The notes beneath the pieces are model-generated. The model did no database searches. It was not told the DNA's origin and worked only from the letters and a program-made list of their open reading frames with translations. 64,000 nt of DNA from Dimorphilus gyrociliatus (taxonomy: Eukaryota; Animalia; Annelida): NCBI GenBank assembly GCA_904063045.1, contig CAJFCJ010000004.1, positions 308,195 to 372,194 of the forward strand, read 5' to 3'. The position numbers and the translations under genes were made by a program. This document shows positions 20,113 through 56,889 of this stretch, piece by piece. The first letter of the stretch is position 1. Each line of letters begins with the position of its first letter.

Positions 20113-22341
20113 ATGAACGCGGTGATATCATTGTGCCATTTTTGTGATAATCACGGCCCCCAAGTAATTTTTACGACCCAAGCCTTTCATGCTCAGGAGC
20201 TATATGTTACGGAAGGTGATGAGGCGCAATATAGGAGTGATTTCCTTAACCATTTCTTCGAGAAAAGAGGAAATAAGCACGAGAATCGATGTTTTGTAGA
20301 ATCTTCAACCAATGAAATAAAATGTGAAAACAATACTCCATCAAAGACAGTACAAACTTGCGAAGTATTACAATTATATCTTTTTCTAGATCATTTTTCA
20401 ATTAACTTTCAAATGAAAATGTAGAAATTACTAAAATTATTTAATGACTCATTCTGAAATGACCACTAAACTCGATTGGAGATTTGGTTATTCCAGATTA
20501 ATAATAAAACGTTTATCTTTCAAAGGGGTGTTCATCTCTAGATCCATTGTTACCAGGATACGTCAGCAAAGATAACGAAGCAAATGTATCGTATATAAGC
20601 AGTCAACATCCACCTAAAACTCAAGTGTACGAAATGCTAAAGCAGTCGTGTATGCGGAGTTTAACTGGCGATGATTCTTTAGGACCAACATCAATAAATT
20701 TTTATGGAGATAGTCAAAGCGGACATACACTAAGCTATACGTTTCACTTAAAAGACAGTGGGGCAAGAGGCAGCAAAAGGTAATTATTTATATATGAAAA
20801 TCGTTATATCGCATATGTCTATTATATTTTTTAGGCAATATAGCATAATTGTATTGATGATGGATAAAATTTACTTGTTGAATTCATGGTCATTTTTAGT
20901 AAAAAATATCAAACATTTCATTGAAGAAGTTATAATGAAAGGCGAAAAAGTATAGTTAAATGTTTTAACAAAAAAATCAAAATATATTGATTTTTATATC
21001 GACAGTCATTCCAAGAAATTCAAAAATCTGGTGATACGTCCAAAAAAAGAGTTAGAGCTTTTGTTGAGATCACGAATGATCCGAATATCTTTAGGAAAAC
21101 TCATCAAGCGTTCTTGTGGATATTGCAGACGGGTGGCAATCGCTTAACGGAAACCATATTAGAGGGTCCACCAACGGAAGACTCTATTTTAGATTTGGAA
21201 AAGCAAGAAGGTATGTTGTATAATTTTATTTTGTTTTTATATATATATAAATTATTACCAATTCTTCTGTCAGTTACGGAGGAAGGATTCATAAAACTTT
21301 TCAGTGAAAAAAAGTTAACTGGCGAACAAATTGAAGAAGGTTCAGCTCAGAACTCTTCAGAGGAGGAGGAAGATAATGGACCAGTAGAAGTTTTTAAAAG
21401 TTTAAGACATTTTTTAAAATTTATTGGACTGCCAAATTTTCATTCACTTGCCCATCACATACTAATTGGGAAACAAGTTGTTATAAGAGCTCAGGATCGT
21501 AGATTAGTTAAATCTGCAATAGACTGCTTAAAAATATTACTACCACAAGGTTGTTGTAGAATCATATATTTTAGTAATAAATACGAGGAGAGATCCAAAT
21601 GTAATCTACTTGGTATGCCCATATCTGCTCAATTACGTCAAACTTCGAAAACTCCTTTCCTTTTGTTAAACATATCCGTAAGTATACTGTTATTTCTTTA
21701 TAATCTAATTTAAAATACTAATTAATTTATCATTGTCAGGAGTCTACAAAAAACATGCATATTCCGAAAAGTATACAATTAAAGGACAAAGAAGTTAATA
21801 TAAAATCTTCTATAAATCTATCAGATACACGTAAATATTTTACTTTCTTTTTTTTGTTAGCGAACTTAAGCCTAAAATCACGAAACTTAATTTGTTCTAG
21901 TTTACGTCACAATTTTACTTGAACTTTTCTTTTGTGTAGTTTAGGCCTATTATAAAAAAATTGTAATCTTTTATTTTCTTCGACACAGCACCGCGAATTT
22001 TAACCCAAATAGAAAGGATTTTATTGAACACAAGTTTAAACGAGTTGGCCATAGAGCAATCTGTAATTATGCTTAGAGAAGAATGGCTTTCAAAGGTCAA
22101 AGTATTGTTTAAATATAAAATTTCGGGAGGAGTAGGAACAGATGAAGTCCATAAAAAGTAAGTGTATTTAAATAAGAAACTGTTCATGTATGATACTTAT
22201 TTTGGTTAAAATTTTTCCAGACTATTAACCGTTGTTAAAGCAACAACACACGACATGGAAGTGTTAAACTTTTGGAAAACCGGTCTCAGTGTTCAGTACA
22301 AGAAAAGAATGGCTAACTGCACGAAACCTGTCCAATTCTAA
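20113..22341 (+). CDS. FLCN: Folliculin
   Basis: MNAVISLCHFCDNHGP; CMRSL...F.LKDSGARG; WILQTGGNRLTETILEGPPTED; LREEWLSKVKVLFKY; LNFWKTGLS. Stop TAA at 22339-22341. Confidence 0.95.
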
Positions 22342-25300: not shown

Positions 25301-25847
25301 CATAAGCAATACTACTACGAACTTTACTTACAGGCTCACTCAGACCACGTGGAAGATTATCTCGGATCATTTTCTTAGTCTGTAGTTTGAAGATATATTA
25401 TTCAATTAGAAGAAAACTTATATAAAATCTTTTTAGTTTACAGTTTAATGTATATTAATGATAAAGAAGTACAATGGATGGTTAAGACTCTTACTTGGGC
25501 CGGTGTTTCTGGTTTCTTAAATTTTTCATTATTGGCTGACCAATGAGCCTCAACATACCGTTTTAAAAGCACAGAGGCAAGTTGGCGAATTTGAAGCGGA
25601 AAGCTTTGGTCCATGGCAAATTCGGTTAAGTAGATGCCAAATTCTACGTATAATTGAAAATATATCAATGAGCGAAAATATAAGAAGTTGGACAAAAAAG
25701 CTTATATTTACCATCAGTAACTTCAATAGCTTCAATACGCTGTTCGGCTGCTTTTCTAATTGATTCATCAGGGGATAAAACTGCATTTAAACTCTCAATA
25801 AGAGCCTCTTTTAGGTTAAGGGATACTTCCACTGCCTCTCCCGCCAT
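22360..25847 (-). CDS. IPO9: Importin-9
   Basis: [18 protein letters not shown]; [23 protein letters not shown]; WWKKHEA; [13 protein letters not shown]; [12 protein letters not shown]. Final exon ...[10 protein letters not shown] with TAG at 22360-22362. Confidence 0.95.
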
Positions 25848-51188: not shown

Positions 51189-51637
51189 AATTCTTTTTAA
51201 AGTATCAAAAAGGTATAATTATGCTCAGCGTATATTTTTCTCTTCTTATAAGATGGATAAATTTACAATTGAATTTTGCTCTTTGTGCATAAAATAACCG
51301 TTTTACCAGAAGAGCTACTACAGGGGCATTATTCAGCGGTCTGCTACATAAAAATAACGCATAGATTGCGATTATAGTGACATCTGGAGCCCGAATTACC
51401 AATGTTTCTCAACCCATAATTCATTTGGTTTTTGCGTTTGTTTCTTTAATTAAAAGGCAATTTACTACAAGTTCGGTTGTGTTTTTTTTGTATATTAAAT
51501 ACGAACATAATGCAGCTGATAGCTTTATTAATAGTTTGTAAATTATTAAGAGCTCAACAGCACACTGTACATTTAGAATTTCAGCTATTTCCTTCGTCAA
51601 AGACAAAAAATTATCAGTGTTCTAGTGTTGACTCTAT

Positions 51638-52227
51638 TTATTTTGCGGCCCATTCTCTTTTTTCTTGAAATTCCCTTTCAACTTCTTCAACGAACGGAGT
51701 TAGATACTTGACGTCTGTTTCAAAGGTGGTCCATTCTGCCTTAGGAAGAGTTTCTTTTTTCAGGGACAAATGAAGCGCTCTAGTTATCCTAAACATTCTC
51801 TCATCATACAAATTGTCGGGAAGTCGGCGAATTGCTTCCGTAACAACTTCAGTTTCCCTCAAGGTATCATCGGTCAACAAACCTATGAGTGTTTTTAGTT
51901 ATGAAATTAATTTATAGTTCTCCATAAAAATGGCTAATTTCTTACCAAGCTGAGGGTAGTAGGCTCGGTTGAAGAGAAATTTACTTAATGTTTGCCGAAG
52001 TCCAGAAGCTGTAGGAAGTAATTATGAACGCTTTTTGGCAATGTCACATTTAAAAAAACTTAGCCTATACTGTTTTTGTAATTTTCTGACAACGTTGGCA
52101 GAAAAAATTAAAGAAAAGACAAGATATCGCTAGTTTTATATGATCCAAATAATTTTTATATATAATCTACTTAGTGATCGTAGTAATAACATCTAAACTT
52201 ACAGGCAACTTGTCTTGCTGCAGCCAT
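51638..52227 (-). CDS. UQCRB: Cytochrome b-c1 complex subunit 7 (QCR7)
   Basis: MAAARQVAS|SGLRQ...YYPQLG|LLTDDTL...EAIRRLP..LYDERMFRITRALHLSLK...LPKAEWT...YLTPF. Confidence 0.95.
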
Positions 52228-52369
52228 CTTAACGATATATAACCTTGACAGTGGGTTATTTTTGTCAGGTAAGCTTTCCAATTCTAAAACGGTAGCCATA
52301 CTTTCGGCGCGGATACATTAACCATATTATGTTGTAAGTCAGCGCTAAAGTTCAATAATTCGGCTAAAT
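52228..52369. promoter_or_regulatory. 142-bp divergent (bidirectional) promoter region between UQCRB and the AtuA-like gene
   Basis: Head-to-head ATGs at 52227(-) and 52370(+). Confidence 0.6.
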
Positions 52370-55300
52370 ATGTTAACCTTAGCTCATCAAGTTTTAAGAA
52401 CAAAAAGTCAGAAATGCATTCCTATTATTTGTGGTTATAAGCACTATTCGTCAAATGGACGATTCAATAAAGAATTGGGAGGTGACACAGTTCGAATCGG
52501 CTGTGCCAGCGGATTCTGGGGTGATACAGCCACATCAGGTTCAAAACTGGATAAACATAACTATGTCATGACTGAACTAATTAGCTACTTTTTTATTAGC
52601 TCGGCAATTGGTACAAAAGGGACAAATCAATTATTTAGTTTTTGATTATCTATCGGAAATTACAATGTCACTTTTAACAGCGGCAAAAAAAAAGGACAGT
52701 GTGAGTTAATTTGAACAATAGAGAAACCTTTTTTATTAGTAGTATGTAAAAAAGGAAATGTTTTTGAGTAGTTATGATCTTATATTCTTGGCACACTTCA
52801 ATCAAAATCAGCTTCCGTGCAGAAACAATTAGAACACAAGCCCGGTGCGAGAAAGTTATAAGTCTTGTAAAACATCTTCTAAAGGATCATCCAGAGTAGG
52901 TGTTGATACTGATGGAGGTCCAGAATCTGGTTTGGCGGGATGTCTTTTTATAAACATATCCCAACTTATCACTGTTTCAGGATGTCTCTTTAAGAAACAT
53001 ATAGCGTCTTGTACAAACTGTGCAGGATCTTCTGGTGTATAATGTAAAATTCCTGAAGTTATCGCTTCTAACAAAGGAATTATTTCTTTTTCTGACATAT
53101 AGTTTTTACATTGTTCCTTTATAGCCTCCATGGTGTAATTTTTCGATCGTCTGCTTTTATTTCCCCGTTGCTAAGTTACTCTGGCGGGAATTACAGTCAT
53201 TCAAAATACGCTATGGCTATTATCGAACTTCATAGCCCTAATGATATGACTGATTTTTAATTATATTATTATATTTCAGAAATTTGGCTATGCCCCCGAT
53301 TTTGTACATTTTGCAGTTGGCCCATTACTTAAAGATATTAAGAATTCTGGTAAGATATTAATTATCAAAACATTTTTAAAAAAAAAAAAAAAATAACAAA
53401 AGCTAGTAAATACTAATGAAATGATCTTTTTTTCTTATATAAAAGGTATAAAAGTCATAAGCAATGCCGGTGGGGTAAATCCTCATTCATGTGCGAATGC
53501 TTTGGAAGAGATAGCAAAGAAAAATGGAATAAATTTAAATGTTGCTGTAATAACTGGTGATGATTTAATGTCCAAGGTAGAAAATCATTATTTAAATTAG
53601 TCTATTTTGTCTTGCCCTAGATATTTAACATTGTTCCTTATTAATATAGACAGATGAATTATCAAAAGAAAATATTACAGATATGAATGATAGTTTAGCA
53701 TTACCGAAAAGTCTAACCAGCATGAACGCATATTTTGGGTAAAGATTCAATATATTTACACAGTGATTAGCCTTTAATGAAATCGAATTTAAATACTTTC
53801 TTTAGAGCATTTCCGATTGCCAGAGCTCTTGACAAAGGTGCTGATGTAGTTATCACTGGAAGATGCGTCGATAGCGCTCTTGCATTGGGTCCTCTAGTTC
53901 ACGAGGTAGTTTTTCTTTTGAAAATTATACATAACTTGTAAATAAAATGTATATTTTCTTTATTTTATCAGTATAAATGGAATCCAGCCGATTTAGATAA
54001 ATTGGCAATGGGTAGTTTGGCTGGACATCTTATCGAATGCGGTGCTCAATCCACAGGAGGAATATTTACCGATTGGCAACAAGTTGAAGATTGGTGATAT
54101 ATCTTAAAATCTTCTTTACGATAACAACTAATTCCAGTTATTAACATTAGGCATAACATTGGATTTCCAATTGTCGAATGTTCACAAGATGGACCTTTTG
54201 TTCTCTTAAAACCAGATAAAACTGGAGGATTAGTTAGTCGTGGTACAGCATCTGAACAATTGGTATATGAAATTGGAGATCCCCAGAACTATATACTTCC
54301 TGATGTAGTATGTGATTTTAGTCAAGTTAAAATTCAAGAAATTAAAGGATCGGAGAATGAAGCCGTACTCGTCCAAGGAGCTATCGGTAAACGGGCACCT
54401 GATTCTTATAAAGTAAGTTAGGACGTAAAATTTATTTAGTTGGCGATTAAATCTAATCTAATCTTGTAGGTTTGTGCTACCTATATGGATGGTTATAAGG
54501 CTACCGCTGTTTGTTGTCTAGGTGGAAAAAATTCAGCTGAAAAAGGTAGAAAAACGGCAAATGCAATTTTAAACAGGTCAATTATTTATCAATATTCTTG
54601 TAATCGTGTTTTATGTTTTGAAATCTAAACAAATGTTTACTTTATATAGAGTTCGTAATATATTTAAGAGCTTAAAATTGGAAGACTTTAGGAGAACACA
54701 TGTTCAAATTCTAGGAAATGAAGATACTTACGGCGAACACGCTAATTCGTCTTTGGTATAATTTAGATTAATAAAATAGGTTATTGGTTTAAACTTGAAA
54801 AAGATAAAATACTTTTAGAACTTACGAGAAGGAGTTGTCTGGATGAGTGTTCACCACAATCAAAAGATGGCGCTGGAGATATTCTCTCGAGAGATAGCTG
54901 CAGCTGGAACTGGAATGGGTAATTATTTTTGACACAAGGACTACTCTATTACCGAATTGTACTAATTCCTATACAAAACTTTTAGCTCCTGGGCTAACAG
55001 CAATCGTAGGAGGAAGGCCTAAAGTGTAAAATAGTCTATTCAGTATTGTTTAATTTTTTCCAACACTGATGATTTGCAGATCACCACTTCTCAGATTATT
55101 TTCCTTTCTCTATCCCAAGGACAAATTTAATGTAAACCTATGATAATCTTTTTTATGAACTATGCGCTAAAGTTTAACTGATTAGGTATCAGTCGGCTGT
55201 AATTCATCTACTGAGGCGTTCGAAAATCCTCAACCTGTTGGTGAAACTTTTAAACAAGAACGACCATCTACAGAAATTAAAAATGAAAAGGTCTCTTTGA

Positions 55301-56023
55301 CAACCGGCAATTCTTCTTACAGTCTTGATGAATTAGCTTTCGCCAGAAGCGGGGACAAGGGAAACCATTGTAACATAGGTTTATATAAACTGATTTCTTT
55401 GAAATCACTTGTGAGACTATCATAAGAATGTTGATCTGTCTTGCAGGTATTGTGGCAAGAAAAGACGAATATTACGAGTATTTGAAGGACCAACTAACTG
55501 AAGAGGCCATTGGTAAATACTTCAGTCATGTCTTTGAAGACAGAAATTGGGAGGGTAAAGTCGTAAGGTACGAAGTAAAAACAACGCACAAAATGCTTCA
55601 TTTCAATGCAAAATTGAAGAGTTGCAGAGGAAATTTTATTATACCCTAAACCATAACACTAGTTCTACACTACAAGGGGCGTAGCAGTTGATTTGCAGCC
55701 TATGTATAATCTAACAATCAACTGATATACACCTACCTAACTTTTTTTGAAAATACCAATTACAACTCTTTAAATGTCTTTTTTTAGGTATGAACTACCT
55801 GGAATAAAAGCATTGAATTTTCTTTTGAAGAATAGCTTAGGTGGCGGTGGTATAGCCTCTTTAAGAAGCGATCCTCAGGTAGGCCAATATAATAATTTAC
55901 AGTTCTTTACAACCAGGTTCATTGAAGATTATATTTAATATCTTTCCTTACGGATAAAAGGGTAAAGCCTTCGCTCAAATGCTACTGGATTATCGATTGA
56001 CCAATATGCCAAATATTAAATGA
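52370..56023 (+). CDS. Acyclic terpene utilisation AtuA / DUF1446-family protein, probably mitochondrial
   Basis: [62 protein letters not shown] and C-terminal ARSGDKG...[23 protein letters not shown]. Many short introns; TGA at 56021-56023. Confidence 0.9.
52856..53131 (-). CDS. 91-aa RIIa/Dpy-30-type dimerisation-docking (D/D) domain protein nested in an AtuA-like intron
   Basis: [36 protein letters not shown]...ISWDMFI resembles the N-terminal D/D domain of AK5-type proteins. Strong Kozak context (accATGG) and a minus-strand AATAAA at 52732-52737. Confidence 0.75.
   Translation of the reverse strand: MEAIKEQCKNYMSEKEIIPLLEAITSGILHYTPEDPAQFVQDAICFLKRHPETVISWDMFIKRHPAKPDSGPPSVSTPTLDDPLEDVLQDL
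53167..53190. promoter_or_regulatory. X-box (RFX) plus E2F site upstream of the nested D/D gene
   Basis: GTTGCTAAGTTAC at 53167-53179 (minus strand GTAACTTAGCAAC) and GGCGGGAA at 53183-53190, 36-59 nt upstream of ATG 53131. Confidence 0.55.
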
Positions 56024-56889
56024 AATACTCTGTCTAGAAACAAATAAAAAGAGAGGTGGACAGAGAATGAGACGGATGATAAAAGTAATGAAATATTGAA
56101 TTTAGAAGAAGAATCATTAAGATTTTATAAATAATAATAAAAAAAATTATCAAAATAAGCAAATTTTTTTCTTGATTAGTCTCTTTAATTTAGTTAATTT
56201 AATAATAAAACTTGATTTTTTTTCCCTCAAAATGGCAAAATAATAATACAAATTCCCTTTCTATACAATTGAATTTCATTGTCTGAAAATTAATCCTTGT
56301 TTTCTAGCGATCTTTTAAGTTTTTTTTTCCCGATCATACCATGTATTATCTATTTCAAGTAAAATCGTACGATTTCTAGTAATAGAATACCTAAAGTTAT
56401 TTAGAAAAGGTTTTGAAGAGCATTTAATTTTGGAAGAATATTGGTTCAAAGTGTTTTCTTTTATCTTTTGAAACTTTATCTTTTTTTCTCTTAATCTACC
56501 TTGATACGATCAATGTAAACGTTATGAATTTCACTATTCAATAAACACAATATAAAGATTGCATATTACACTTTTCTATGTAGTAATTATAAACGAATGG
56601 TACGTCTTCTTAAGAATTATATTCCTTAAATCGCTTACAATAGATGTTTTACATGCGATAAGAATTCTTATATTAATAGTCTGATAAAAGTTTTAATTAA
56701 TATTGACTACGCATTTCAGAATTATGCAGTTTTTGTATCACAATGAAAACAATTATAAGACAATTTAGTTTAAAGAATTAATATAGAGCTATAGACATCA
56801 AATTCTTTTTTTATAAAAAAAAAAAAAGAGGCAAGCGCCACCTATACCTAATCATTTTAGTTTCCGCATTTAGTATTTGATAAGGAGAC

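What the first reader, a model, noticed from the sequence alone, without database searches (positions are those of the whole stretch)
52701..53279. Complete nested antisense gene (X-box, E2F site, 91-aa D/D protein, polyA signal) inside one 579-nt intron
Seen: this AtuA-like intron (GTGAGT at 52701 to CAG at 53279) is about ten times the usual size. On the opposite strand it holds, in order, an E2F site (53183-53190), an X-box (53167-53179), accATGG (53131), a 276-nt ORF, TAA (52856) and AATAAA (52732-52737). The protein is essentially a stand-alone RIIa/Dpy-30-type D/D domain resembling the AK5 N-terminus, with a short Pro/acidic tail and no catalytic domain. Known: D/D domains dock on AKAP-type amphipathic helices and are common in axonemal radial-spoke and central-pair proteins; RFX and E2F4/5-multicilin drive motile-cilia genes. 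Inference: an unannotated ciliary or sperm micro-adaptor, or a competitor of PKA/AK anchoring. Its induction could also interfere with host-gene transcription in ciliated cells.
Basis: partly seen in the sequence, partly recalled or inferred. Interest (0 to 1): 0.8.

Follow-up and report, generated by a model that had tools for sequence, protein, structure and literature searches.

The report
Small docking-domain gene nested in intron
A real, expressed and so far unannotated 91-residue gene sits backwards inside an unusually long intron of the worm Dimorphilus gyrociliatus; it encodes a lone PKA-type docking/dimerisation domain of an uncharacterised animal family related to the front end of AK5-type adenylate kinases, and a conserved RFX-type X-box hints at a role in ciliated cells.

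Summary
The core observation holds. The 579-nt GT..AG intron (52701-53279) is confirmed by a spliced RNA contig. It is intron 2 of an AtuA-family gene whose other introns are 54-96 nt. On the minus strand lies a 91-codon ORF (52856-53131). A separate, unspliced 490-nt RNA contig covers it (52772-53255).

A sister species has the same nesting. dN/dS is 0.04 at dS 0.87, so this is a protein-coding gene. The genome is Dimorphilus gyrociliatus, and this protein is absent from its deposited protein set.

The protein has an R1D2-type docking/dimerisation fold:
- profile E 1e-6 to the EFCAB10 D/D domain;
- AF2 pLDDT above 90 for residues 1-62;
- Z 6.7 to the PKA RI-alpha D/D domain.

It belongs to an unnamed family of 75-140-aa proteins in cnidarians, annelids, nematodes and rotifers. 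In nematodes and rotifers these genes lie just upstream of multi-domain adenylate kinases.

The X-box is conserved in the sister species. X-box-like sites lie upstream of 5 of 7 lineages' homologues (P about 3e-4). The E2F site is not conserved, and the AATAAA lies beyond the end of the RNA contig. A ciliary role is inferred, not shown.

It is a new member of a known kind. The scan had not noted it before.

The parts
52701..53279 (+). Intron 2 of the AtuA-family host gene, 579 nt, GT..AG
   Evidence: Spliced contig of run X1 joins 52700 to 53280. The other host introns are 54-96 nt.
52598..52700 (+). Host exon 2 (AtuA family)
   Evidence: Contig piece 52598-52700. Neighbouring exons hit Pfam AtuA PF07287 at E 7e-13 and 3e-10.
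53280..53348 (+). Host exon 3
   Evidence: Joints 52700->53280 and 53348->53445.
52856..53131 (-). Coding sequence of the nested gene: 91 codons plus TAA. One exon.
   Evidence: ORF list. dN/dS 0.04 and dS 0.87 against the sister-species copy. Family of homologues.
52772..53255 (-). Minimum extent of the nested transcript: unspliced RNA contig, 484 of its 490 letters laid, with no differences
   Evidence: Record 2 of run X1, depth 172 against 969 for the host contig. It stops short of both intron ends. The strand is inferred from the coding frame, not from the reads.
53167..53179 (-). X-box-like site GTAACTTAGCAAC, 48 nt before the ATG. One mismatch to GTNRCC-N-RGYAAC.
   Evidence: Only such site in the window by the relaxed pattern. 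Conserved in the sister species. Similar sites lie upstream of homologues in 4 other lineages.
53132..53205 (-). Conserved block upstream of the ATG (5'UTR and/or core promoter)
   Evidence: 76% identity to the sister species, against 43% for the rest of the intron on that side.
52772..52855 (-). Conserved 3'UTR, 84 nt
   Evidence: 78% identity against 61% beyond it. No unusual RNA fold, z +0.57. No Rfam match.
52781..52786 (-). AATATA, candidate poly(A) signal for the end seen at about 52772
   Evidence: Sequence. It lies 9-14 nt before the point where the RNA contig leaves the genome. Inference only.
52732..52737 (-). Probably not the signal used.
   Evidence: Lies beyond the RNA contig's end. 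Not conserved in the sister species.
53183..53190 (-). TTCCCGCC, E2F-like octamer. Probably a chance match.
   Evidence: The sister species has TTTGTGCC here. One in the window against 0.32 expected.

Best explanation
Shown: intron 2 of the Dimorphilus gyrociliatus AtuA-family gene holds, on the opposite strand, an intronless gene that is transcribed on its own. The gene is under strong purifying selection.

Shown by profile and model: its 91-residue product is an N-terminal helix plus a helix-loop-helix docking/dimerisation (D/D) domain of the PKA-RI-like 'R1D2' type (residues 1-62). It has a family-specific W-D-x-F cap, followed by a disordered but conserved Pro/acidic tail. It has no catalytic domain. 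It belongs to an uncharacterised metazoan family of small proteins. These proteins are the free-standing counterpart of the N-terminal D/D module of AK5-type adenylate kinases.

Inferred mechanism: the domain forms a four-helix bundle in one of two ways. Either it homodimerises and clamps an amphipathic helix of an anchoring protein, or it pairs with the D/D domain of an adenylate kinase, as EFCAB10 does with AK8 on the radial spoke. In this way it would tether or tune nucleotide-handling enzymes at a fixed site.

Inferred regulation: a conserved X-box near the start suggests control by RFX factors, and hence expression in ciliated cells (ciliary bands, protonephridia, sensory neurons or sperm).

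Inferred origin: the gene reached the intron in the dinophilid lineage, by retroposition or by relocation plus intron loss. Homologues in a cnidarian and two other annelids keep one conserved intron and are not nested.

Confidence by layer: real stand-alone coding gene about 0.93; D/D fold about 0.9; RFX/ciliated-cell expression about 0.55; the particular binding partner below 0.3.
For: Gene is real:
- dN/dS 0.04 at dS 0.87.
- The CDS is 86% identical to the sister species, more than the flanking host exons at 71-80%.
- The stop is kept within one codon in both species.
- A separate unspliced RNA contig spans 52772-53255, while the host contig splices the intron out.

Stand-alone:
- No joint leaves the contig.
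- No adenylate-kinase P-loop occurs in any frame of the 64-kb window.
- Annotated homologues of 75-100 aa exist in Nematostella, Ridgeia, Paralvinella, Rotaria and nematodes.

Fold:
- The family profile hits EFCAB10 (9fqr) at E 1.1e-6, the radial-spoke protein FAP385 at 3e-4, AK8 at 7.5e-3 and the PKA RI-alpha D/D at 0.015.
- The AF2 model built on the family alignment has pLDDT above 90 for residues 1-62.
- The best structural matches are RI-alpha D/D 3im4_B (Z 6.7, rmsd 1.8, 49 of 49 residues) and 5hvz_B, then FAP385, RI-beta and RII-alpha D/D.
- P33 and P36 flank the loop, which is the R1D2 hallmark given in PMC8339350. They are invariant and near-invariant in the family.
- Language-model neighbours are small RIIa proteins.

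Link to AK5-type kinases.

Precedent for D/D-to-D/D anchoring of an adenylate kinase: PMC12541429.

X-box:
- Conserved in the sister species.
- A site with at most one mismatch lies within 300 nt of the ATG in 5 of 7 lineages. The background is 1.4-10.6% of 300-nt windows. P is 9e-6, or 2.6e-4 for the 600 nt that I scanned a priori.

Origin:
- One intron after '..LFE' is shared by Nematostella, Ridgeia and Paralvinella.
- None of these three lists an AtuA neighbour.
Against: - The single sequence does not reach Pfam's RIIa cut-off (12.5 bits against 22.4). Foldseek E-values are not significant and Z 6.7 is middling for a helical domain.
- Contigs cannot show strand, ends or level. Part of the RNA contig could come from unspliced host pre-mRNA.
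- The X-box has a T at half-site position 6 and an unusual 1-nt spacer.
- The X-box lies 76 nt inside the RNA contig. It is absent upstream of the Rotaria and Ostertagia homologues.
- The 300-nt window for the X-box test was chosen after seeing the hits.
- The family is well represented in nematodes, which lack motile cilia and flagellate sperm. To my knowledge vertebrate AK5 is a brain enzyme. A motile-cilia role is therefore not implied.
- No vertebrate AK5 sequence was compared here.
- D. gyrociliatus loses introns generally (PMC7854359), so retroposition is not required.
Confidence: 0.72

Rival explanations
1. The gene and fold are the same, but the role is not ciliary. The protein would be a cytosolic or neuronal modulator. 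It would bind the D/D domain of an AK5-type kinase or of PKA-RI, or occupy AKAP helices, and so compete with their anchoring. The X-box-like sites would be unrelated to cilia or non-functional.
For: - The family is abundant in nematodes, which have no motile cilia.
- Vertebrate AK5 is, to my knowledge, a brain enzyme.
- The X-box is imperfect and lies inside the RNA contig.
- No X-box was found upstream in Rotaria or Ostertagia.
Against: - X-box-like sites lie upstream in 5 of 7 lineages, well above background.
- The closest solved relatives are axonemal proteins: EFCAB10, FAP385 and AK8.
- RFX also drives genes of non-motile sensory cilia, which nematodes do have.
Confidence: 0.22
2. The ORF is the first coding exon of a larger gene, for example an AK5-like kinase, and splices onward to a catalytic domain.
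For: In Aphelenchoides and Rotaria the small D/D gene model lies 143-430 nt upstream of a multi-ADK kinase on the same strand. P0023 joins the D/D domain to the start of a P-loop kinase.
Against: - The RNA contig runs unspliced 84 nt past the stop and shows no joint.
- The stop is conserved to within one codon, with a 2-nt indel just after it.
- No kinase P-loop occurs in any frame of the window.
- The next minus-strand gene is UQCRB.
Confidence: 0.03
3. No gene is present. The ORF is a chance reading frame in a conserved intronic regulatory element, and the RNA contig is retained host intron.
For: - Long introns of D. gyrociliatus often hold open-chromatin regulatory regions (PMC7854359).
- Contigs do not show strand.
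Against: - Substitutions are about 4:1 synonymous in the minus-strand frame.
- 27 homologues at E below 1e-3 come from four phyla.
- The model is confident.
- The contig stops 71 and 24 nt short of the intron ends instead of reaching the exon junctions.
Confidence: 0.02

Closest known systems
N-terminal D/D module of AK5-type adenylate kinases (R1D2 clade of the RIIa/Dpy-30 superfamily, PMC8339350)
   Same: - The motif pattern is the same: helix, G in helix I, P-x-x-P loop, F in helix II.
- RefSeq names the 94-aa Nematostella homologue 'adenylate kinase isoenzyme 5'.
- Homologues sit next to, or are fused to the start of, P-loop/ADK kinases.
   Different: - There is no kinase domain in the gene or anywhere in the window.
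- The protein ends after a 30-residue disordered tail.
- No vertebrate AK5 sequence was aligned here, so the relation to the vertebrate enzyme rests on naming and synteny.
EFCAB10 (radial-spoke protein that anchors AK8 through its D/D domain; PDB 9fqr; PMC12541429)
   Same: - It is the best solved-structure relative by sequence (E 1.1e-6 with the family profile).
- It is a small protein whose N-terminal D/D domain binds the D/D domain of an adenylate kinase.
   Different: - EFCAB10 carries an EF-hand region after the D/D domain. This protein has none.
- The W-D-x-F cap is not aligned in EFCAB10.
- Nothing here shows a radial-spoke location.
FAP385 of Chlamydomonas radial spoke 1 (PDB 7jtk_u), a 70-aa stand-alone D/D protein
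   Same: - It is a stand-alone micro-protein that is little more than a D/D domain.
- Profile E 3e-4. Z 5.4 over 50 of 50 residues.
   Different: Sequence similarity is distant, and it has no conserved C-terminal tail. Orthology is not implied.
PKA RI-alpha D/D domain (3im4, 5hvz)
   Same: It is the best structural match, including the extra N-terminal helix typical of RI (Z 6.7 and 6.4, rmsd 1.8 and 1.4, full coverage of the crystal chain).
   Different: - There are no cAMP-binding domains.
- Identity is about 20%.
- The cysteines that form the RI disulphides were not examined.
Nested (intronic, antisense) genes of animals
   Same: The gene lies wholly inside one intron of a host gene, on the other strand, with its own transcript.
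   Different: Nothing unusual, except that the host genome is very compact and the nested gene accounts for the intron being about nine times the median length.

Membership tests
RIIa/Dpy-30 docking-dimerisation (D/D) superfamily | Helix-loop-helix protomer that superposes on solved D/D domains | tested here: met
   The AF2 model built on the family alignment has pLDDT above 90 for residues 1-62. RI-alpha D/D matches: 3im4_B at Z 6.7, rmsd 1.8, 49/49 residues; 5hvz_B at Z 6.4. RII-alpha, DPY-30 and FAP385 follow. Z is middling, as expected for about 50 residues.
RIIa/Dpy-30 docking-dimerisation (D/D) superfamily | Significant sequence match to bona fide D/D domains | tested here: met
   Family profile against the PDB: EFCAB10 1.1e-6, FAP385 3e-4, AK8 7.5e-3, RI-alpha 0.015, DPY30 0.02.
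RIIa/Dpy-30 docking-dimerisation (D/D) superfamily | Reaches the curated Pfam threshold for RIIa (PF02197) or Dpy-30 (PF05186) | tested here: not met
   The window protein scores 12.5 bits on RIIa against a cut-off of 22.4. Family members give only sub-threshold hits to Tex55, Dpy-30, DUF5586 and RIIa. This is a limit of the models' reach for a divergent subfamily. It does not contradict the profile and fold results.
RIIa/Dpy-30 docking-dimerisation (D/D) superfamily | Forms a dimer that binds an amphipathic helix | not testable with these tools
R1D2 (RI-like) clade of D/D domains | [quoted passage not shown] | tested here: met
   P33 is invariant and P36 is kept in at least 90% of the family alignment. 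The model has helix 2-14 ahead of helices 17-31 and 36-49.
Adenylate kinase 5 | Adenylate kinase catalytic domain(s) with a P-loop | tested here: not met
   The ORF stops at codon 92. No G-x-P-G-x-G-K-[GST] occurs in any frame of the window. The transcript contig is unspliced. It is therefore not an AK5, only a relative of its N-terminal module.
RFX (X-box) regulated ciliary genes | X-box close to the start of the gene, conserved in relatives | tested here: met
   One-mismatch site at -48, kept in the sister species. Sites lie within 300 nt of the ATG in 5 of 7 lineages, P 9e-6 to 2.6e-4. Caveats: 1-nt spacer, T at position 6, and the site lies inside the RNA contig.
RFX (X-box) regulated ciliary genes | RFX binding or dependence, and expression in ciliated cells | not testable with these tools
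   The only run that held the stretch is served as contigs of unrecorded library type.
E2F4/5 target genes | Conserved E2F site in the promoter | tested here: not met
   TTCCCGCC is replaced by TTTGTGCC in the sister species. The count in the window is near expectation.
Nested antisense gene | Whole transcription unit inside one host intron, on the opposite strand, with its own transcript | tested here: met
   Intron limits come from spliced RNA. A separate contig at 52772-53255 lies inside them. The coding frame is on the minus strand. The strand of the RNA itself is not shown by contigs.

The most novel reading that the evidence does not exclude
The small proteins form an ancient, RFX-controlled family, cnidarian to annelid, of free-standing partners for AK5-type adenylate kinases. 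Each would pair its D/D domain with the kinase's own D/D domain to place the kinase in cilia of sensory neurons or motile cells. This would be an AK5 counterpart of the EFCAB10-AK8 pair. The D. gyrociliatus copy would be a retrocopy that carried its X-box along in the 5'UTR when it landed in the AtuA intron.
Probability: 0.15. Interest if true: 0.55.

Novelty: new member of a known kind. Interest (0 to 1): 0.35.

Why it matters
- It adds a missing gene to the annotation of a reference compact annelid genome.
- It explains why this one intron is about nine times the usual length.
- It defines an unnamed, widely distributed family of D/D micro-proteins. All annotated members are 'hypothetical', apart from one mislabelled as AK5.
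- It gives that family a testable lead. The X-box suggests RFX control, and the link to AK5-type kinases suggests a partner.
- If the partner idea holds, it extends the recently shown principle that small D/D proteins position adenylate kinases in cilia. Otherwise it is an ordinary nested gene.

Tried and rejected
- Rfam scan of 52000-54000 at E up to 1 gave no match. The conserved UTRs are not a known RNA family.
- The conserved 3'UTR folds no better than shuffles (z +0.57).
- The single-sequence AF2 model was poor (pLDDT 60). It was replaced by the alignment-based model.
- Foldseek against the PDB gave no significant E-value. Only the ranking and the second-look Z scores are used.
I did not repeat it, because at dS 0.87 such marks would be gone.
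- The E2F site was rejected as non-conserved.
- AATAAA was rejected as the signal in use.
- The 'exon of a larger kinase gene' reading was rejected.
- The long 'hits' P0002, P0008, P0018 and P0027 are repeat or low-complexity translations, not domain fusions.
- The look-up of sequencing runs listed a single run of unrecorded library type. Strand, ends and tissue could not be addressed.
- The search of earlier findings by words found nothing.
Full report
**Observation.**
- GTGAGT at 52701 and CAG ending at 53279 on the plus strand;
- on the minus strand, TTCCCGCC (53190-53183), GTAACTTAGCAAC (53179-53167) and ATG at 53131 with A at -3 and G at +4;
- a 91-codon ORF, TAA at 52858-52856 and AATAAA at 52737-52732.

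**Host gene and organism.** The plus-strand exons around the intron hit Pfam AtuA (PF07287) at E 7e-13 and 3e-10. Downstream on the minus strand lies UQCRB (UCR_14kD, E 5e-25). Its product is 99% identical to DgyrCDS2737 of Dimorphilus gyrociliatus. The window therefore comes from this miniature annelid, whose median intron is 66 bp (PMC7854359).

**RNA evidence.** Only one public run (X1, library type not on record) held the stretch. Laid on 51300-56300, its contigs behave as RNA.
- A 3050-nt contig joins the UQCRB and AtuA exons across many GT..AG and CT..AC joints. One joint is exactly 52700->53280, which confirms the 579-nt intron.
- The other host introns seen are 54-96 nt.
- Exon 1 is 52370-52536 and exon 2 is 52598-52700, so this is intron 2.
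- A second, separate contig of 490 nt lies unspliced on 52772-53255 with no differences. Its depth is 172 against 969 for the host contig.
- This contig covers the ORF, 124 nt before it and 84 nt after it. It stops 24 and 71 nt short of the intron ends.
- Retained intron would be expected to run to the exon junctions.
- Six letters of the contig go on unlike the genome beyond 52772, at the 3' end in the sense of the ORF. That would fit the start of a poly(A) tail, but I could not see the letters.
- Contigs cannot prove strand, ends or abundance.

**Is it a gene?** The word-index search found one close relative, P0001 (94% identity), on Logan contigs of five runs. Those contigs show the same arrangement: AtuA exons on one strand, the ORF on the other inside the intron, and UQCRB next door.
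- The full ORF there has 90 codons, with the same start.
- Between the two copies there are 28.8 synonymous and 7.2 non-synonymous changes, giving dS 0.87, dN 0.034 and dN/dS 0.04.
- The CDS is 86% identical at the DNA level, more than the flanking host exons (71-80%).
- A 74-nt block before the ATG (76%) and the 84-nt 3'UTR (78%) are also conserved. The rest of the intron is 43-61% identical.
- The disordered tail has only one amino-acid change in its last 30 residues.

This is a protein-coding gene under strong constraint.

**Annotation status.** Neither the 91-aa sequence nor the version from the second ATG is in the 15-billion-protein collection. The neighbouring D. gyrociliatus UQCRB model is there. 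The gene is therefore missing from the deposited annotation. A longer chimeric model cannot be strictly excluded.

**What the protein is.**
- Alone, the sequence gives only weak hits: Pfam RIIa at E 0.12 and 12.5 bits, and EFCAB10 (9fqr) at E 0.04.
- Its language-model neighbours are small RIIa-domain proteins (0.86, 182 shared features).
- The exhaustive search found 27 proteins at E below 1e-3, mostly 75-140 aa.
- Named members are all 'hypothetical' or 'unnamed' in Ridgeia, Paralvinella, Capitella, Rotaria and many nematodes. The exception is a 94-aa Nematostella protein that RefSeq calls adenylate kinase isoenzyme 5.
- The alignment (A2) has invariant G27, P33 and W57, and near-invariant P36, F39 and F60.
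- A profile of the alignment hits the D/D domain of EFCAB10 at 1.1e-6, the radial-spoke micro-protein FAP385 at 3e-4, AK8 at 7.5e-3, the PKA RI-alpha D/D at 0.015 and DPY30 at 0.02.
- With the alignment, AF2 gives pLDDT above 90 for residues 1-62 (helices 2-14, 17-31 and 36-49, then the W-D-x-F turn). Residues 69-91 form a disordered tail.
- Foldseek's E-values are not significant for so small a domain, but its list is dominated by D/D domains.
- The second-look aligner gives RI-alpha D/D 3im4_B at Z 6.7, rmsd 1.8 over 49 of 49 residues, and 5hvz_B at Z 6.4. FAP385 scores Z 5.4 and RII-alpha Z 5.0.
- The two prolines flanking the loop and the extra N-terminal helix are the hallmarks of the RI-like 'R1D2' clade. 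PMC8339350 places EFCAB10, AK5, AK8, VEST1, FBXL13 and TEX55 in that clade.

**Relation to adenylate kinases.**
- In Aphelenchoides the 100-aa gene model ends 143 nt before a 933-aa protein with two ADK domains, on the same strand.
- In Rotaria the 75-aa gene lies about 280-430 nt before a 959-989-aa multi-ADK protein. That protein has a faint D/D-type hit of its own.
- P0023 of Gnathostoma carries the D/D domain followed by the start of a P-loop kinase.
- The family is therefore the AK5-type N-terminal module, found either attached, adjacent or free.
- In Nematostella, Ridgeia and Paralvinella no kinase is listed within 8 kb.
- In this window no adenylate-kinase P-loop exists in any frame. 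The transcript contig ends 84 nt after a conserved stop.
The gene is stand-alone here.

**Promoter and ends.**
- The X-box-like site is the only match in 64 kb to GTNRCY-N(0-3)-RGYAAC, against 0.62 expected in the whole window.
- It is kept in the sister species with an R-to-R change.
- I scanned 600 nt upstream of the start codons of homologues, allowing one mismatch to GTNRCC-N(0-3)-RGYAAC. The hits were:

| Lineage | Position relative to ATG |
|---|---|
| D. gyrociliatus / sister species | -48 |
| Ridgeia | -92 |
| Paralvinella | -296 |
| Nematostella | -119 |
| Aphelenchoides | -78 |
| Ostertagia | none |
| Rotaria | none |

- Background in the same loci is 1.4-10.6% of 300-nt windows and 2.8-21.9% of 600-nt windows.
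- Five of seven therefore has P of about 9e-6 (300 nt, chosen after the fact) or 2.6e-4 (600 nt, as scanned).
- This is real, if indirect, support for RFX control of the family.
- Against it, the site here has a 1-nt spacer and a T in the left half-site. It also lies 76 nt inside the RNA contig, so it may be in the 5'UTR.
- The E2F octamer is not conserved and is near chance.
- The AATAAA is not conserved and lies beyond the contig's end. AATATA at 52786-52781 fits better.
- No Rfam family and no unusual fold explain the conserved UTRs.

**Origin of the nesting.** The homologues in Nematostella, Ridgeia and Paralvinella share one intron just after the '..LFE' of helix I and are not nested in AtuA. 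The D. gyrociliatus and sister-species genes have no intron and sit in AtuA intron 2. Either a retrocopy landed there, or the gene moved and lost its intron. D. gyrociliatus loses introns in general (PMC7854359), so I cannot decide between these.

**Mechanism.**
- Shown: a stand-alone, constrained, transcribed D/D micro-protein.
- Inferred from the biochemistry of the superfamily (PMC8339350): two protomers form a four-helix bundle whose groove binds an amphipathic helix.
- Inferred by analogy with EFCAB10-AK8, where the two N-terminal D/D regions are necessary and sufficient for direct binding and EFCAB10 holds AK8 on the radial spoke (PMC12541429): this protein may pair with the D/D module of an AK5-type kinase.
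- Inferred from the X-box: expression in ciliated cells.
- The family is frequent in nematodes. This argues against a role limited to motile axonemes and keeps a sensory-cilium or plain neuronal role open.
- Interference with host transcription is untested. Both RNAs are present in the one run available.

**Verdict.** It is a new member of a known kind: a D/D micro-protein in an ordinary nested-gene arrangement. It belongs to an uncharacterised family, with a useful regulatory lead.

Noticed in passing
window 51474-52536: UQCRB (minus strand) and the AtuA-family gene (plus strand) are head to head. One RNA contig runs through both, with the piece 52203-52536 shared. Their 5' ends therefore abut or overlap, suggesting a bidirectional promoter. 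The merge may also be an effect of unstranded assembly.
   Followed up: no
L006:8750-11700 (Ridgeia piscesae JAODUO010000924.1): The single intron of the Ridgeia homologue is filled with some 60 tandem 51-nt units. Each translates to a copy of the start of exon 2 (FYQS[IV]ANGLMYNVP). The long repeat 'proteins' P0002 and P0008 in the search may be translations of arrays of this kind.
   Followed up: partly
L009:4001-8372; L011:4001-8372; L012:4001-8372: In Aphelenchoides besseyi and Rotaria the small D/D gene model lies 143-430 nt upstream, on the same strand, of a 930-990-aa protein with two or more ADK domains. This may be a split gene model, alternative first exons, an operon (nematode) or a true tandem pair. 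In L011 the kinase model has its own faint D/D-type hit, DUF5586; none is listed for L012.
   Followed up: partly
window 52859-52948 (residues 62-91): The predicted disordered Pro/acidic tail has only one amino-acid change against the sister species at dS 0.87. Yet it is not shared with other family members. It may be a lineage-specific short linear motif, or a helix that docks into the D/D groove.
   Followed up: no
window 20549-20561 and 25707-25721: These are the only two other one-mismatch X-box-like sites in the 64-kb window: GTATCCTGGTAAC (minus strand) and TTTACCATCAGTAAC (plus strand). Their neighbouring genes were not examined.
   Followed up: no
P0015 (Capitella teleta ELU14987.1): This 292-aa model joins a Mab-21 C-terminal domain to the D/D module at residues 212-272. 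It is probably a chimeric gene model of two neighbouring genes.
   Followed up: no
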